Virus record (IMG/VR): IMGVR_UViG_3300020147_000065
Location: 124,001-188,000 of that record
Direction: 5' to 3' (one strand)
DNA: 64,000 nucleotides
Position numbers and translations under genes: made by a program. The notes under the pieces were generated by a model. It saw nothing but the letters and a program-made list of their open reading frames with translations. It ran no database searches and was not told the origin of the DNA. Shown here one piece after another: positions 52,159-58,212 of the stretch (within the stretch, counting starts at the first letter, position 1; each line of letters begins with the position of its first letter).

Positions 52159-52314
52159 ATGAAAAGAAAAGGTTTTACCGTCATCGAACTGCTTGTCGTA
52201 ATTGCTATCTGCGCGATTCTCATTTCTGTCATCGTTACCGGCGTTCAACGTGCGCGTGGTGGAGCAACCCAAAGCCAGGAGCGCGTAGTCCCCCGTTTTC
52301 AGCCTCAACGCTGA
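52159..52314 (+). CDS. 51-aa type IV prepilin-like peptide (not in ORF track)
   Basis: MKRKG^[28 protein letters not shown]: basic leader, G(-1) F(+1) E(+5), hydrophobic helix. Confidence 0.85.
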
Positions 52315-53541: not shown

Positions 53542-53781
53542 TCAGGGATAGGCCAGTGCCGGCGCTCCCTGAGTAAAGTAACGGAGTTTCTCTATTCCTT
53601 CAAACCTTACTTCCAATACTTCTGCACCACTTTTACCGTCTTTACCGTATCGCTTGACAGAAACAATCTCGCCTGGTGTGTTTTCAGGGACTTCTACCGT
53701 CTTCATATCGAGTCCCAATAACTCCATGCGAGCAACGATCTTATCACCCTGTTTGAAATTAACGTCCTCTGTAAATTGCAT
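53542..53781 (-). CDS. SH3-like small protein in an inverted cassette
   Basis: Minus-strand TTGACT-CCCCGTGG spacer-TATACT-6-ATG (MQFTEDVNFKQGDKIV). Confidence 0.7.
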   Translation of the reverse strand: MQFTEDVNFKQGDKIVARMELLGLDMKTVEVPENTPGEIVSVKRYGKDGKSGAEVLEVRFEGIEKLRYFTQGAPALAYP

Positions 53782-53867
53782 GATATTAGTATATAGCCAA
53801 CCACGGGGGTTAGTCAATGCCCCCCCCCCCATTGCACACTCTAAACAATAGCGGTAAAATATATTCC

Positions 53868-54290
53868 ATGAGCAAAACAAAAGTAACCCCGAACAGCGTA
53901 GCATTCAGCGCGTTGCAGGAAGTTGTCAAAGTTGGTAACACGAAACTGAAAGTTCTTTTCGTTGCCGAACGCGGCGTCCACGGTGCCGAAACCTACTGGA
54001 ACGACGAAATGCGCGGCAATGTCGGCAAAGAACTGACCGTGAGAGATTCCGACGCGAGCAGCAACGAATTTCAGCTTTCCGACGATTTCTGGTATCCTGC
54101 AATCTCCTTGTTTGCTGAACCCAAACAGCCGGTAGAAGTGTCGCTGCCTGATTACACGGCGACGGTGTATCCTACCCATCTCCAAGTTGGTTATCAGGAA
54201 ATCACCAAAGAAATGGTTCTGGCAATCGTCAAGGGTGGACTGGATACGGGCTTCCTCTCCACATCAGATTTGGAGGGTCTGAATAAATAA
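53868..54290 (+). CDS. Paralog family C protein, copy 1
   Basis: GxHG...W...M...G...WYPAxxL and LPDYTA...VGxQxxTKEMxLxIV...GF motifs. Confidence 0.85.
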   Translation: MSKTKVTPNSVAFSALQEVVKVGNTKLKVLFVAERGVHGAETYWNDEMRGNVGKELTVRDSDASSNEFQLSDDFWYPAISLFAEPKQPVEVSLPDYTATVYPTHLQVGYQEITKEMVLAIVKGGLDTGFLSTSDLEGLNK

Positions 54291-54375
54291 GCCCCGGCTC
54301 CCTTCGGGGAGCTTTGCCCCCCCTTGCGCACAGCTCTAATCTTCTGTATAATTATTAGTAATAAGGAGGCCAACG

Positions 54376-54645
54376 ATGCCTAAATCAATGTTTCGTCCAT
54401 CGGATGTAATGGACAACGCGCATTTCAATGACCACACTAAGGTCTTGACTGTGACGTTTCAGAGTGGTTCGGTTTACGAGTATGAGAATGTGCCTGAGCG
54501 CGTTTTCAATCGTTTAAACGCCGCTCCTTCTAAGGGACAGTTCTTTAATCAGAACATCCGTAATAAATACGCATTTAAGTGTGTGTTTAAACCCGCTAAG
54601 ACAACTACAGCGCCGCAGGTTCAGCCCGTGGCTGTCACTGTCTAA
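54376..54645 (+). CDS. KTSC domain protein
   Basis: LTVTFQSGSVYEYENVPERVFNRLNAAPSKGQFFNQNIRNKY; AAGGAGG SD. Confidence 0.9.
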   Translation: MPKSMFRPSDVMDNAHFNDHTKVLTVTFQSGSVYEYENVPERVFNRLNAAPSKGQFFNQNIRNKYAFKCVFKPAKTTTAPQVQPVAVTV

Positions 54646-54742
54646 TGTTCCTCCTTACCGGGAAACGGAGGCTTCCGGGCCTCCGTTTCTTCGGTCTGCC
54701 CCCCCCTTGTCACAAGTAAATTAAAACGATATAATCTATTAC

Positions 54743-55159
54743 ATGAGTGAAACAAACAACGTGAACATTGCTGAACTGAGCCTGAACCAAATTGCATTCT
54801 TAAAGCTCGGCCTCAAAGAAGGCGACACCGTAAAGGTTGTTGCTAAAGTGCCAGAAGGCACACACGGTTCTGATATTTACTGGGAAACGAGTATGACCCG
54901 TAAAATCGGTAAAACCCAACGAGTAGTAGGTGCGCGGAACCATAGCCGAATCGAACTCGAAGATGGGTATTACTACCCTGCCCTCGCGCTGGAAAAAGTG
55001 AAAGTTGTCAAGGAAATTCGGCTCCCTGACTACACCGCTTTAGTCAGCGAAGATGGTGTATCCGTGGGTTGCCAAAACCTCACCAAAGAAATGGTGTTGG
55101 GTATCGTAAAAGCCGCAGTGGAAACGAACTTCATTTCACAGGAGGACTTGGAGTTCTAA
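54743..55159 (+). CDS. Paralog family C protein, copy 2
   Basis: Family C motifs. Confidence 0.85.
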   Translation: MSETNNVNIAELSLNQIAFLKLGLKEGDTVKVVAKVPEGTHGSDIYWETSMTRKIGKTQRVVGARNHSRIELEDGYYYPALALEKVKVVKEIRLPDYTALVSEDGVSVGCQNLTKEMVLGIVKAAVETNFISQEDLEF

Positions 55160-55233
55160 GCCGGGAGCCGTCGAAAGACGGCGACCTGCCCCCCCCCTTG
55201 TCACTACTCAAGAATAACAGTAAAATATATTCC

Positions 55234-55653
55234 ATGAGTGATAAAGTAAAGACAATGAATGATGTGGCTTTCGAGTTTCTCAATGAGAAATTCAAAGTTG
55301 GCGACAAAGTGCGAGTCACCATGCGGGTTGACTCTGGTGTGCAGGGTAATCGAATTGACTGGCTTGAGGGAATGGAAGAGGCTCTCAATTCGGGACTTCA
55401 CACTATTCTGGATACCAACGAGTCGTATGGTGCGTTCCGACTGAGTTGTGGTTACTGGTTCCCGGCGTTGGCAATCAGCTCTGATGTTGGTAAAGTCACT
55501 GTCAAACTGCCCGACTACACAGCCGAAATCACCAAAGAAAAAGTCAACGTAGGTTGTCAAGTTCTGACAAAAGAGATGATTCTCAGTATCGTAAAGGCCG
55601 CAGTGGACACCGGCTTTTTAAATGAGGAGGATATTGCCTCACTTAAAGGTTAA
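55234..55653 (+). CDS. Paralog family C protein, copy 3
   Basis: Family C motifs; leaderless MSDKVK. Confidence 0.85.
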   Translation: MSDKVKTMNDVAFEFLNEKFKVGDKVRVTMRVDSGVQGNRIDWLEGMEEALNSGLHTILDTNESYGAFRLSCGYWFPALAISSDVGKVTVKLPDYTAEITKEKVNVGCQVLTKEMILSIVKAAVDTGFLNEEDIASLKG

Positions 55654-55732
55654 GCGGCGGGGAGCTGCCTTCAGGCAGCGACCTCTTGCCCCCCCCTTGC
55701 ACTAACCAACTAAAAACGATAGAATATATTCC

Positions 55733-56158
55733 ATGAGTGATACAACAGCAAAGACGGTTAATGATGCAGCGTTTGAGATTCTCAGCGCAACGGTCAAAGA
55801 AGGCAGCAAGGTTCGCGTAATTCTTCGTATCCCAAAAGGTATGCATGGAAGCCGCATCTCATGGGTTGACTCGATGGACGGAAACGTGGGCGTCGGTATC
55901 CACACTGTAACCGATGTAAGCCCTCGCTACGGTGCTTTCGAGTTGGACAACGAAAAGTGGTATCCTGCGGTTGCTCTTTCGGCGGACGCGGAAACCGTTC
56001 GCGTCGCGCTCCCTGACTACGAAGCAGAAATTACCAAAGATGGTATCGTAGTCGCGGGGCAGAACCTCACCAAAGAGATGGTTCTCGGCATCGTGCAGGG
56101 TGCGCTCGACACCGGATTCCTTGATAAAGGAGATGTAGCCACTATTAAGACTTCCTAA
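55733..56158 (+). CDS. Paralog family C protein, copy 4
   Basis: Family C motifs. Confidence 0.85.
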   Translation: MSDTTAKTVNDAAFEILSATVKEGSKVRVILRIPKGMHGSRISWVDSMDGNVGVGIHTVTDVSPRYGAFELDNEKWYPAVALSADAETVRVALPDYEAEITKDGIVVAGQNLTKEMVLGIVQGALDTGFLDKGDVATIKTS

Positions 56159-56238
56159 GCAACGGGGAGCCATCCACGGGTGGCGACCTTTTGCCCCCCC
56201 CCTTGCACCAAAATAAGATAAGCGGTATAATTTATTAC

Positions 56239-56676
56239 ATGAGCGATACACAAACAACCCCCGAACTGACCGTGAACCAAGCCGCATTTAATGTTTTAAA
56301 TGCGAAAGTGACCGAAGGCGACAAGATTCGCGTCGTCCTCAAAGTGCCTATTACCGTGCATGGTAGTGATGTGAACTGGGTCGAAGAGATGGACAACACC
56401 ATCAACAAAACGCTTCGCGTTCGCCGCGTTGACGCAAGCAATGGTTCTTTCTATCTCAGCAACGGCTACTGGTATCCTGCCGTGGCACTCTCCACCGAAG
56501 TAGCAAAAATCACCGTGCCGCTGCCGGATTACACGGCGGAAATCACCAAAGAACAGGTCAACGTCGGCTGCCAGATTTTGACCAAAGAAATGATTCTCGG
56601 CATCGTGCAAGGCGCGTTGGATGTAGGGTTTCTGAGCGAAGAGGATGTGAACCGCCTCGACACCAGAGAAGTATAA
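56239..56676 (+). CDS. Paralog family C protein, copy 5
   Basis: Family C motifs; leaderless MSDTQT. Confidence 0.85.
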   Translation: MSDTQTTPELTVNQAAFNVLNAKVTEGDKIRVVLKVPITVHGSDVNWVEEMDNTINKTLRVRRVDASNGSFYLSNGYWYPAVALSTEVAKITVPLPDYTAEITKEQVNVGCQILTKEMILGIVQGALDVGFLSEEDVNRLDTREV

Positions 56677-56750
56677 CCGGGTGGACTCTTCGGAGTCCAC
56701 CCTGCCCCCCCCCCTTGCGCTGATAGAATTTAAACAGTATAATTTATTCC

Positions 56751-57167
56751 ATGAGTGAAACAAGAAAGACGGTTAATGACGCGGCGTTTGAAATCCTCAA
56801 CGCACAGTTGAACATTGGTGATAGAGTTCGTATTGTCGCCAAAATTGATGAGGGTGTCCACGGCAGCAAGACTGTTTGGACATCTCGCATGAATGATAGT
56901 GTGGGTCAGTTTATGACTATTCGCGGTGTTGAACCTGAGTATGGTGCTTTTCAGTTGGATAACTATTACTGGTATCCTGCCGTGGCACTCGATACTCAGG
57001 TGCATAAAGTGACGGTTAATCTGCCGGATTATTGCGCTGAAATCACCAAAGAAGGGGTGAACGTGGGTTGTCAGAACCTCACCAAAGAAATGATTCTGCA
57101 AATCGTGCAGGGCGCGTTAGACGTGGGTTTTCTCGATGCCGAGGACATCGAAAGTCTGAAAGTATAA
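56751..57167 (+). CDS. Paralog family C protein, copy 6
   Basis: Family C motifs. Confidence 0.85.
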   Translation: MSETRKTVNDAAFEILNAQLNIGDRVRIVAKIDEGVHGSKTVWTSRMNDSVGQFMTIRGVEPEYGAFQLDNYYWYPAVALDTQVHKVTVNLPDYCAEITKEGVNVGCQNLTKEMILQIVQGALDVGFLDAEDIESLKV

Positions 57168-57244
57168 GCGGCGGGGAGCTATCGAAAGATAGCGACCTTG
57201 CCCCCCCCTTGGCAACACTCAATATAAACAGTAAAATATAAGAC

Positions 57245-57643
57245 ATGAACATGAACCAAGCAGCATTCGAGACGTTGAAGGAAACGCGCGGCATCGGTGA
57301 CAAAGTGAAGGTTGTCCTGCAAGTGGACAAAGGTGTGCATGGAAACCTCTTCCGTTGGGATTCCGGTATGACCGAACAAATCGGAAAAGTCTTGACAATC
57401 AAAGAGTTCGATTCTTCGGACAACACCATCCTGCTGTCAGATAGCCGTTATTATCCCGCACTCGCTTTGATGAGCGACAACGGCCCCATTATCGTGGAAT
57501 TGCCCGATTACAAGGCAGAAATCCACGCTGACCGTGTGCAAGTTGGTTGTCAGTGCCTCACCAAACAGATGGTGTTGGACATCGTGAAGGGTGCAGTATC
57601 TGTCGGGTTTATGAGCGAATCAGATTTGGAGGGTCTGCGATAA
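57245..57643 (+). CDS. Paralog family C protein, copy 7
   Basis: Family C motifs. Confidence 0.85.
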   Translation: MNMNQAAFETLKETRGIGDKVKVVLQVDKGVHGNLFRWDSGMTEQIGKVLTIKEFDSSDNTILLSDSRYYPALALMSDNGPIIVELPDYKAEIHADRVQVGCQCLTKQMVLDIVKGAVSVGFMSESDLEGLR

Positions 57644-57720
57644 GCCCCCGCGGACTCTTCGGAGTCCGCCTTGCCCCCCCCCCTTGCACAAGGTTCAAAT
57701 TAAGGGGTATAATTTATTCC

Positions 57721-58137
57721 ATGAGCAAACAAAAGACGTTACACGACATTGCATTTGAAGAACTGGGCATCGAAGAGGGCGACTTCGCTAAAGTCGTCCT
57801 TAAAGTGGACGAAGACGTTCACGGTAACCCGCTCCGTTGGTCGCATGGTATGGAAGAAATGTTAGGTAAGACATTTCGCGTCACCAACATTGATACCAGC
57901 GACAACACAATCGAACTGAACAACGGCGAATGGTTCTCGGCTATTTCGCTCGAAAAGGCAACCGGCGAAATCAAGGTGCAATTACCGGATTACACCGCAG
58001 TCGTAACCAAAGAAGGCATGGAAGTTGGTTGCCAGAAACTCGACAAAGACAAGGTTTTGGAAATCGTTCAGGCTGCAATCACCACCGGTATGATTGACCG
58101 CGATGATGTCGAAGACCTCGACTATCACGACGACTAA
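57721..58137 (+). CDS. Paralog family C protein, copy 8
   Basis: Family C motifs; leaderless MSKQKT. Confidence 0.85.
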   Translation: MSKQKTLHDIAFEELGIEEGDFAKVVLKVDEDVHGNPLRWSHGMEEMLGKTFRVTNIDTSDNTIELNNGEWFSAISLEKATGEIKVQLPDYTAVVTKEGMEVGCQKLDKDKVLEIVQAAITTGMIDRDDVEDLDYHDD

Positions 58138-58212
58138 GCGGGGTGCTGCCTTCGGGCAGCACTCTTGCCCCCCCCCCTTGCCTTGTCCCCGTGGTTGGGT
58201 TATCCTTTACAT

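What the first reader, a model, noticed from the sequence alone, without database searches (positions are those of the whole stretch)
53868..58137. Eight tandem paralogs (family C), each with its own promoter, diversified in the N-domain and conserved in the C-domain
Seen: eight 132-145-aa genes with an SH3/KOW-like N-part (GDxVxV...GxHG...W...M...WYPAxxL) that varies between anchors and a more conserved LPDYxAxI...VGCQxLTKEMxLxIV...GF tail; unit boundaries coincide with C-runs; a KTSC cassette separates copies 1 and 2. Inference: cassette-level amplification then diversification, giving a panel of binders for variable host targets on a shared oligomerisation or effector domain.
Basis: partly seen in the sequence, partly recalled or inferred. 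Interest (0 to 1): 0.76.

Follow-up and report, generated by a model that had tools for sequence, protein, structure and literature searches.

The report
Eight-gene SH3-like paralog array, jumbo phage
An uncultured 221-kb soil phage carries eight old, intact tandem copies of a small acidic protein of unknown function, each copy with its own promoter and hairpin. The protein joins a Mind-bomb-type SH3 binding domain to an undescribed C-terminal module.

Summary
Eight co-oriented genes (132-145 aa) lie at 53868-58137, with a KTSC gene between copies 1 and 2. All eight copies in the 221-kb phage genome are in this array.

The N-part is an SH3-like barrel related to the peptide-binding REP domain of Mind bomb 1. 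The C-part is a confidently folding strand-strand-strand-strand-helix module with no Pfam family and no solved relative.

The C-run promoters are not special to this family. About 55 genes over 27 kb share the same cassette: hairpin, C-run, sigma-70-like hexamers, then ATG 6-7 nt after the -10 (leaderless by spacing). Even so, the family's promoters and hairpins resemble each other more than their neighbours, so whole cassettes were duplicated.

The duplications are old: synonymous sites are saturated and nucleotide identity is 48-59%. All copies are intact, with pN below pS. I found no convincing gene conversion and no way to test for positive selection.

The SH3 barrels differ as much as those of unrelated family members. 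The flanking helices are conserved only within this phage.

My best reading is a panel of early cytoplasmic protein binders with a shared phage-specific surface. That function is inferred, not shown.

The parts
53820..53867 (+). Promoter of C1: C11 run, A, TTGCAC, 17 nt, TAAAAT, then 7 nt to the ATG. The same homopolymer run is shared back-to-back with a minus-strand promoter.
53868..54290 (+). C1, 140 aa. VGYQ replaces VGCQ.
54291..54375 (+). Hairpin after C1, then the C-run promoter and the 23-nt Shine-Dalgarno (SD) leader (AAGGAGG) of the KTSC gene.
54376..54645 (+). KTSC-domain gene (89 aa) inserted between copies 1 and 2. A second KTSC paralog lies at genome position 194402.
54646..54742 (+). 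Hairpin after the KTSC gene, then the C2 promoter (C8, TTGTCA, 17 nt, TATAAT, 7 nt, ATG).
54743..55159 (+). C2, 138 aa.
55160..55233 (+). Hairpin (GGGAGC-stem-GCGACC type) and C3 promoter. 79% identical over 78 nt to the C6-C7 spacer.
   Evidence: (D10)
55234..55653 (+). C3, 139 aa.
55654..55732 (+). Hairpin and C4 promoter.
   Evidence: D5
55733..56158 (+). C4, 141 aa. VAGQ replaces VGCQ.
56159..56238 (+). Hairpin and C5 promoter.
   Evidence: D5
56239..56676 (+). C5, 145 aa.
56677..56750 (+). Hairpin (GGACTCTTCGGAGTCC type) and C6 promoter. 94% identical over 36 nt to the C7-C8 spacer.
   Evidence: (D11)
56751..57167 (+). C6, 138 aa. This is the copy that was modelled (pLDDT 94.4).
57168..57244 (+). 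Hairpin and C7 promoter.
57245..57643 (+). C7, 132 aa.
57644..57720 (+). Hairpin and C8 promoter (C10, TTGCAC, 18 nt, TATAAT, 7 nt, ATG).
57721..58137 (+). C8, 138 aa, the most acidic copy (net charge -17). The nearest outside relative, P0008, groups with it.
58138..58212 (+). Hairpin after C8 and the promoter of the next, unrelated gene. This is the end of the array.

Best explanation
The array is a lineage-specific tandem expansion in the early-type accessory region of an uncultured soil jumbo phage.

Shown:
- The repeated unit is a whole expression cassette: C-run plus sigma-70-like promoter, ORF, and a GC-rich hairpin.
- It was copied to eight units long ago, and all eight have stayed intact.
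- Each product is a soluble, acidic protein of about 15 kDa. It has an N-terminal helix, an SH3-like barrel of the Mind bomb REP (SH3_15) type, and an independently folding four-strand-plus-helix module carrying a near-invariant VGCQ turn.

Inferred:
- Host RNA polymerase transcribes each cassette early, as a monocistronic mRNA that starts at or next to the ATG (leaderless).
- The eight SH3 barrels have diverged as far as unrelated family members and bind different peptide or protein ligands.
- The helices conserved only within this phage form a common surface. It either docks all eight on one shared partner or joins them to each other.
- The set therefore acts as a panel of adaptors or inhibitors in host takeover or counter-defence.
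For: Copy number and tandem order.

The cassette was the unit of duplication. Family promoters are 65% alike against 52% to other same-class promoters (p = 3.6e-9). Spacers are shared at 79% over 78 nt and 94% over 36 nt, with compensatory changes in the hairpin stems.

The copies are old and maintained. Nucleotide identity is 48-59%, pS is 0.71-0.78 in both parts, pN is 0.34-0.43, and all eight ORFs are intact.

Conservation of the C-part is at the protein level. For C3/C5/C6 the C-part is 71-75% identical in amino acids, yet pS is 0.71-0.82.

The N-part is REP/SH3-like: E = 7.8e-7 to 4tse; Z = 7.1, rmsd 2.0 over 63 residues to 4xi6; and nine of 71 family members hit PF18346. The MIB1 REP domain binds a short peptide epitope (PMC11887331).

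The C-module folds on its own with pLDDT 94.9.

Modular conservation, given as own copies versus 62 outside members: SH3 0.37 versus 0.35, N-helix 0.47 versus 0.20, C-helix 0.62 versus 0.20, tail 0.45 versus 0.10.

All eight copies have pI 4.4-5.2 and negative mean hydropathy.

Elsewhere the family is one copy per contig, or appears as SH3 repeats within a single polypeptide.

The surrounding region consists of about 50 small genes of almost entirely unknown function.
Against: - No ligand, partner or phenotype is known for any member of the family.
- No transcription start site or timing data exist; 'early' and 'leaderless' rest on consensus and spacing only.
- The homodimer prediction gave no answer (score 0.20 against a mark of 0.42).
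- The N-versus-C contrast is modest, and 32 of 138 circular shifts match it.
- SH3 divergence equal to the family background is also what neutral drift on surface positions under fold constraint would give.
- Individual paralogs score below Pfam's SH3_15 threshold (best 14.4 bits against 24).
- The VGCQ cysteine is lost in C1 and C4, so a shared catalytic role is unlikely, and the motif's meaning stays unknown.
Confidence: 0.42

Rival explanations
1. Dosage or redundancy. The copies all do one job, for example supplying one abundant early protein. The SH3 differences would then be neutral drift on surface positions rather than new specificities.
For: pN is below pS in both parts and no positive selection is detectable. 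The conserved SH3 positions are the fold-defining ones shared with MIB1 REP. Among the eight copies the SH3 pairwise identity (0.37) sits at the family background of 0.35.
Against: Dosage amplifications are usually young and near-identical. These copies are 36-57% identical in protein with saturated synonymous sites, yet all eight remain intact with functional-looking promoters. A relative's single gene groups with C8 in particular, with 81/66 support and 77.6% DNA identity over 98 nt. That suggests individual copies are kept across phage lineages.
Confidence: 0.2
2. Hetero-oligomeric assembly. The conserved helices and the four-strand-plus-helix module pair the paralogs with each other. They would form mixed dimers or a larger scaffold displaying several SH3 heads, rather than docking on an outside partner.
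For: The N-helix, C-helix and tail are conserved only within this phage. The C-module's weak structural neighbours are PC4, Sub1 and PUR repeats (Z = 3.4-4.0; 11 of the top 15 rows). From general knowledge, those units function as paired half-domains. Other family members chain 2 to 10 SH3 units in one polypeptide, and an oligomer of single-SH3 proteins would mimic that.
Against: The homodimer prediction did not reach the mark, although that tool states this is not evidence against. The Z scores are below noise level. Hetero-pairs were not tested.
Confidence: 0.2
3. Nucleic-acid binders. The proteins would be KOW/Tudor-like plus PC4-like and act on host or phage RNA or DNA, for example in transcription or translation control of the leaderless early mRNAs.
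For: KOW domains, ribosomal proteins L24 and L19, and NusG/Spt5 are among the structural neighbours. PC4 and PUR ssDNA/RNA binders are the weak neighbours of the C-module.
Against: All eight are acidic, with pI 4.4-5.2 and net charge -4 to -17. The best sequence and structure match is the peptide-binding MIB1 REP domain, not KOW.
Confidence: 0.08

Closest known systems
Mind bomb 1 REP domain (Pfam SH3_15, PF18346; PDB 4TSE and 4XI6)
   Same: The SH3-like barrel has the same anchor pattern: G-x-V-x-V, G-H-G, W, M, G, then an aromatic-P/aliphatic strand. The family profile matches at E = 7.8e-7. The model aligns with Z = 7.1 and rmsd 2.0 over 63 residues. REP is a short-peptide recognition module (PMC11887331).
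   Different: The REP domain is eukaryotic and is a tandem pair inside a RING E3 ligase. Here there is a single barrel in a 15-kDa phage protein, with an extra N-helix and a C-terminal module. Individual paralogs are below Pfam's threshold. No ubiquitin machinery is present.
Wider metagenomic phage family found here: one or more SH3_15-like units plus one VGCQ module
   Same: 408 cluster representatives match at E <= 1e-3. They share the core residues G23, V26, G38, W43, M47, G52, P76, Y94 and V105-G-C-Q108.
   Different: Elsewhere the family is a single gene per contig, or 2 to 10 SH3 units fused in one protein. Only this phage has eight separate genes. Its N-helix, C-helix and acidic tail are lineage-specific.
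PC4 / Sub1 / PUR-repeat four-strand-plus-helix units
   Same: The topology is the same as that of the C-module. They fill 11 of the top 15 rows of the wide structural search.
   Different: Z is only 3.4-4.0, with rmsd mostly 3-6 A, which is below the noise level the tool quotes. There is no sequence signal, and the proteins are acidic. This is a lead only.
Lineage-specific expansions of small domains in jumbo phages, for example about 35 zinc-ribbon copies in Bacillus phage G
   Same: One small domain is multiplied within one large phage genome, and the expansion is interpreted as adaptation in conflicts or regulation (PMC7824862).
   Different: The domain is different. Here every copy is an autonomous promoter-ORF-hairpin cassette in a strict tandem array.
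Host-takeover or early accessory gene blocks of large virulent phages, such as the SPO1 host-takeover module and T4 early regions (from general knowledge, not tested here)
   Same: Many small unannotated genes are driven by strong host-type promoters, one or a few genes per promoter.
   Different: Here about three quarters of the genes have the ATG 6-7 nt after the -10, so they have no leader and no SD. The -35 hexamer is preceded by a C7-11 run, and the hairpins lack a U-tract. phiKZ, by contrast, showed no leaderless transcripts (PMC8244752).

Membership tests
Pfam SH3_15 (PF18346, Mind bomb SH3 repeat) | Score at or above Pfam's gathering threshold (24 bits) | tested here: not met
   The best paralog scores are 14.4 and 12.7 bits. 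Some multi-repeat relatives pass, at 24.1-27.9 bits. Nine of 71 family members hit at E < 0.01.
Pfam SH3_15 (PF18346, Mind bomb SH3 repeat) | Profile-level sequence homology to solved MIB1 REP domains | tested here: met
   The family profile matches 4tse_A at E = 7.8e-7 and 4xi6_A at E = 1.3e-5, covering both REP repeats.
Pfam SH3_15 (PF18346, Mind bomb SH3 repeat) | SH3-like five-strand barrel superposable on REP | tested here: met
   The model has pLDDT 94.4. 4xi6_A is the top hit of 48,161 chains, with Z = 7.1, rmsd 2.0 and 63 residues aligned; 4tse_B gives Z = 6.6.
Pfam SH3_15 (PF18346, Mind bomb SH3 repeat) | Binds a short peptide epitope | not testable with these tools
   No ligand is known. 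The function of REP is taken from PMC11887331.
KTSC domain (PF13619) for the interposed gene | Score above the gathering threshold | tested here: met
   72.1 bits against a cutoff of 25, E = 3.1e-20, covering profile positions 2-58 of 58.
Sigma-70-type promoter | -35 and -10 hexamers with 16-18 nt spacing upstream of each copy | tested here: met
   All eight copies have TTGnnn, 17-18 nt, then TA(A/T/G)AAT. The pattern occurs 50 times in the window against 0.08 expected.
Sigma-70-type promoter | Mapped transcription start and dependence on host RNA polymerase | not testable with these tools
   No RNA data exist for this uncultured phage.
Leaderless mRNA | Start codon at the expected transcription start, with no SD sequence | tested here: met
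   In all eight copies the ATG lies exactly 7 nt after the -10. Region-wide, 37 of 50 ORFs start at 6-7 nt. This is by spacing only; the 5' ends are not mapped.
Intrinsic (Rho-independent) terminator | GC-rich hairpin followed by a U-tract | tested here: not met
   Hairpins are present: 42 of 55 have dG <= -12 kcal/mol, against 54 of 300 controls. They are followed by YTG and a C-run, not by T's, and the terminator scan found none on the + strand at the ends of these genes.
PC4 / PUR-like fold for the C-module | Significant structural match | tested here: inconclusive
   Z = 3.4-4.0. Foldseek against the PDB gave nothing below E = 2.5.
Diversifying (positive) selection on a binder panel | dN/dS above 1 at surface sites of the variable domain | tested here: inconclusive
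   pS is 0.71-0.78, which is saturated, and pN is below pS everywhere. No close relatives exist for site models.
Lineage-specific tandem expansion | Many copies here but a single copy in relatives | tested here: met
   There are eight copies here and none elsewhere in the genome. There is one copy on each other contig examined: L009, L010, L019, L021 and L022. Those contigs are short, so the sample is weak.

The most novel reading that the evidence does not exclude
The eight proteins would be a combinatorial adaptor set. A phage-specific helical surface and a PC4/PUR-like half-domain would pair them, with each other or with one shared partner, while eight different Mind-bomb-type SH3 heads capture different host proteins early in infection.

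The set would be built and kept expandable by an unusual gene-expression grammar in which every early gene is a self-contained unit: hairpin, poly-C, sigma-70-like promoter, leaderless ORF. Such units can be duplicated, inserted (as the KTSC gene was) or lost without disturbing their neighbours.
Probability: 0.15. Interest if true: 0.75.

Novelty: new variant of a known kind. Interest (0 to 1): 0.45.

Why it matters
If the binder-panel reading is right, this would be a natural set of eight small, stable SH3-type binders with a common handle. That would be useful for finding what a soil jumbo phage targets in its host. It would also give a first functional foothold for a widespread family of at least 408 cluster representatives that has no annotation at all.

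The C-terminal VGCQ module is an undescribed, confidently folding small domain. A similar four-strand-plus-helix shape, by predicted structure only, also appears at the C-terminal end of phage pentapeptide-repeat proteins and as stand-alone small phage proteins.

The surrounding architecture may be the more surprising result. About 55 cassettes appear to be leaderless, are marked by poly-C, and have hairpins without U-tracts, while the same genome also uses canonical SD sequences. Their transcription and translation could be tested directly in vitro.

Tried and rejected
- **Close relatives.** None turned up in IMG/VR, in JGI metagenomes (only the source contig), in 5.8 billion proteins (own copies only) or in GenBank phages. 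One weak hit appeared in Stenotrophomonas phage BUCTxx99. Copy number in relatives and site-model dN/dS therefore could not be done.
- **Promoter-pattern scan of IMG/VR.** It gave three single matches that look like chance.
- **PHROGs.** No family matched any paralog, apart from one marginal hit.
- **Whole-model Foldseek against the PDB, BFVD and AFDB.** Only SH3-type partial matches appeared.
- **C-module alone.** There was no Pfam hit even at E = 1, no PDB sequence hit and no Foldseek hit.
- **Homodimer prediction.** No answer.
- **Domain fusions in longer relatives.** These contain only more SH3 repeats and no informative enzyme domain.
- **Gene conversion.** The longest identical tracts are 24 nt (C5/C6) and 19 nt (C1/C7). 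The shuffle p-values of 0.006-0.02 are uncorrected for 28 pairs and are biased by clustered conserved codons, so I rejected them as evidence.
- **tRNA and Rfam scans of the window.** Nothing found.
- **Promoters with no ATG nearby.** On alignment these proved to be ordinary leadered genes, not a shared non-coding RNA.
- **Reads.** The second soil sample holds the identical phage at low depth, which gives no variation to exploit.

Full report
**Setting.** The window is positions 124001-188000 of a single 221,108-bp virus contig from IMG/VR, rated 89% complete, with 44% G+C. It was assembled from a soil metagenome. Identical fragments occur at low depth in a second soil sample. The genome encodes RIIA, a DnaB-type helicase, a family-B DNA polymerase and tail-fibre proteins. 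No cultured phage is closer than about 37% identity in the polymerase. It is therefore an uncultured, isolated jumbo phage whose host I could not determine.

**Observation.** Eight co-oriented ORFs of 132-145 aa lie at 53868-58137. They align over their whole length with 22 invariant columns and 36-57% pairwise identity. A search of the whole genome finds exactly these eight copies and no others. An all-against-all comparison shows this is the largest paralog family in the genome.

The gene between copies 1 and 2 is a KTSC-domain protein, scoring 72 bits against a cutoff of 25.

**Promoters and C-runs.** Each copy is preceded by a C8-11 run, TTGnnn, 17-18 nt and TA(A/T/G)AAT. The ATG lies exactly 7 nt after the -10 hexamer. 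This is not a property of the family.
- The same pattern occurs 50 times on the + strand of the window, against 0.08 expected by chance.
- It occurs 66 times on the + strand of the whole genome, 58 of them between genome positions 160.7 and 193 kb.
- Of 50 ORFs that follow such promoters, 37 start 6-7 nt after the -10. Eight have 20-30-nt leaders with a Shine-Dalgarno (SD) sequence, and the KTSC gene is one of those.
- In 42 of 55 cases a stable GC-rich hairpin ends 2-4 nt before the C-run. Among control segments, 54 of 300 are as stable.
- These hairpins are followed by YTG and the C-run rather than a T-tract, so they do not fit the intrinsic-terminator definition.

The whole 27-kb block is therefore built of autonomous units of hairpin, C-run promoter and ORF, mostly without a leader. 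That C-runs fall at the unit boundaries says nothing specific about family C.

**Was the cassette the unit of duplication?** Yes, as far as can still be seen.
- Excluding the C-run, the seven family promoters with a 17-nt spacer are 65% identical to each other. They are 52% identical to the 12 other promoters of identical geometry, and those others are 49% identical among themselves (Mann-Whitney p = 3.6e-9, with non-independent pairs).
- The spacers after C2 and C6 are 79% identical over 78 nt. Those after C5 and C7 are 94% identical over 36 nt. Four hairpins share a GGGAGC-stem-GCGACC frame with compensatory changes in the stem.
- These values exceed the 48-59% nucleotide identity of the coding regions.

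Exact breakpoints cannot be recovered.

**Age and selection.**
- Nei-Gojobori proportions are pS 0.78 and pN 0.43 for the N-part, and pS 0.71 and pN 0.34 for the C-part. Synonymous sites are saturated, so dN/dS cannot be estimated. All that can be said is that replacement changes lag behind silent ones in both parts and that all eight ORFs are intact.
- C3, C5 and C6 are 71-75% identical in the C-part yet have pS of 0.71-0.82 there. That similarity is therefore protein-level constraint. It is neither recent gene conversion nor an overlapping DNA signal.
- The longest identical tracts are 24 nt and 19 nt, which is not convincing after allowing for 28 pairs.
- In a tree with two outgroups, the central copies C3-C6 cluster with C1 and C7 (93/95 support), while C2 and C8 are more distant.

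**Relatives.**
- A profile search of 1.84 billion cluster representatives finds 408 proteins at E <= 1e-3.
- Most are 120-160-aa proteins with the same two parts. Others carry 2 to 10 SH3-like units in one chain.
- Across 71 single-unit members, the near-invariant residues are G23, V26, G38, W43, M47, G52, P76, Y94 and V105-G-C-Q108.
- On the other contigs I could read, the family is single-copy. Their contexts are runs of small unannotated genes typical of phages.
- The nearest outside relative, P0008 (E = 1.2e-30), lies on a 915-bp contig and has the same design: C-run, TTGCTC, 17 nt, TATAAT, 7 nt, ATG.
- P0008 groups with C8 (81/66 support). Its promoter and 5' end match the C8 region best, at 77.6% over 98 nt. 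The gene upstream of it has no homologue in this genome.
- This hints that individual copies have orthologs in related phages and that the content of the array differs between them.

**Structure.** The C6 model has pLDDT 94.4. Its elements are helix 8-19, an SH3-like barrel at about 20-83, four short strands at 87-110, and helices 112-124 and 130-134.

*N-part.* The family profile matches both REP repeats of Mind bomb 1 (4tse E = 7.8e-7; 4xi6 E = 1.3e-5). In a Foldseek-independent search of 48,161 chains, 4xi6 is the top hit (Z = 7.1, rmsd 2.0, 63 residues). PetP, the PARC CPH domain, KOW domains and Tudor domains follow. Individual paralogs are below Pfam's SH3_15 threshold. The MIB1 REP domain recognises a short peptide box in Notch ligands (PMC11887331).

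*C-part.* Modelled alone, it folds with pLDDT 94.9. It has no Pfam family even at E = 1, no PDB sequence match and no Foldseek match. Its weak neighbours in the wide search are PC4, Sub1 and PUR repeats, which share the four-strand-plus-helix topology (Z = 3.4-4.0; 11 of the top 15 rows). In the ESM Atlas, similar shapes occur at the C-terminal end of phage pentapeptide-repeat proteins and as stand-alone phage proteins of 56-71 aa.

**Where the paralogs differ.** I compared per-column pairwise identity among the eight copies with that among 62 outside family members.

| Segment | Eight copies | 62 outside members |
|---|---|---|
| N-helix | 0.47 | 0.20 |
| SH3 barrel | 0.37 | 0.35 |
| Strands | 0.51 | 0.37 |
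| C-helix | 0.62 | 0.20 |
| Tail | 0.45 | 0.10 |

The barrels of the eight copies are thus as different as those of unrelated phages, sharing only the fold-defining anchors. The flanking helices are a signature specific to this phage. The most variable stretch is roughly C6 residues 40-75. All eight proteins are acidic (pI 4.4-5.2; C8 has net charge -17), and their mean hydropathy is negative.

**Interpretation.** What is shown is an old, maintained, lineage-specific expansion of complete expression cassettes. They encode a two-module protein whose first module belongs to a peptide-binding class of SH3 barrels.

The function is inferred. The position among some 50 small unannotated genes behind host-type promoters suggests early expression. 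The acidity argues against nucleic-acid binding. The modular conservation fits different SH3 specificities mounted on a shared surface.

Whether that surface binds a common partner or joins the paralogs to each other is open, because the single complex prediction gave no answer. Neutral drift of redundant copies remains a serious rival. The saturation of silent sites removes the usual test between the two.

**Verdict.** Cassette-level amplification is supported. The N-versus-C contrast is real but modest, and is better described as a variable barrel between conserved helices. The C-run argument is uninformative. The idea of a binder panel for host targets is plausible but untested.

In this report the family is a new variant of a known kind: a lineage-specific expansion of a small binding domain in a jumbo phage (compare PMC7824862). 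It carries an undescribed C-terminal module.

Noticed in passing
window 35836-63440, + strand (genome 160.7-193 kb): About 55 genes share one cassette grammar: a GC hairpin without a U-tract, YTG, a C7-11 run, TTGnnn, 16-18 nt and TAnnnT, then the ATG 6-7 nt later in 37 of 50 cases. Only 8 of 50 have an SD leader, although canonical SD sequences are used elsewhere in the genome (roughly 99 of 169 long ORFs against 2 of 22 in this block). A leaderless early programme of this size looks unusual; phiKZ showed none (PMC8244752). The role of the poly-C run (upstream promoter element, Rho loading site or something else) is unexplained.
   Followed up: partly
whole genome; in the window e.g. 36747, 42724, 44292, 47283, 53147, 53808 (- strand), 58187: The 8-mer CCCCGTGG, usually extended to CCCCGTGGTTnGC, occurs 69 times on both strands genome-wide against about 3 expected. 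It lies inside genes as well as in the -35/-10 spacer of about ten of the C-run promoters. It could be a regulator binding site, a second promoter class or another genome-wide signal.
   Followed up: partly
window 53545-53781, - strand, with promoter 53817-53788: A lone minus-strand 79-aa ORF sits just upstream of C1. It has its own TTGACT-18-TATACT promoter, with the ATG 6 nt after the -10 and a CCCCGTGG in the spacer. It shares the 53820-53830 homopolymer run back-to-back with the C1 promoter, so on its own strand the run is G, not C. No Pfam hit.
   Followed up: partly
window 57673 and 58167: An independent assembly of the source sample has one more C in the C-runs before C8 and before the next gene. 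This is either homopolymer length heterogeneity or a sequencing or assembly error. Run lengths vary from 7 to 11 among promoters.
   Followed up: no
L022:6001-9624 (protein P0007, 1207 aa): A relative from another metagenome carries ten consecutive SH3_15-like units in one polypeptide, followed by about 330 residues without the VGCQ module. It sits in a phage-like context next to dCMP deaminase and HSP20 genes. The same domain is therefore multiplied within a gene elsewhere and as separate genes here.
   Followed up: partly
window 52159-52314: A 51-aa leaderless ORF begins with a prepilin-type N-terminal methylation motif (PF07963, E = 6.4e-8). This suggests a host with type IV pilus or type II secretion machinery.
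   Followed up: no
window 54376-54645 and genome 194402-194788: The KTSC gene inside the array has a second paralog about 16 kb downstream, outside the window. The copy in the array has an SD leader, unlike its neighbours, which is consistent with later insertion of a foreign cassette.
   Followed up: no
window 55131-57429, - strand: Five antisense ORFs appear as a 'family' in the self-comparison. They are shadows of the repeated sense genes, not genes.
   Followed up: yes
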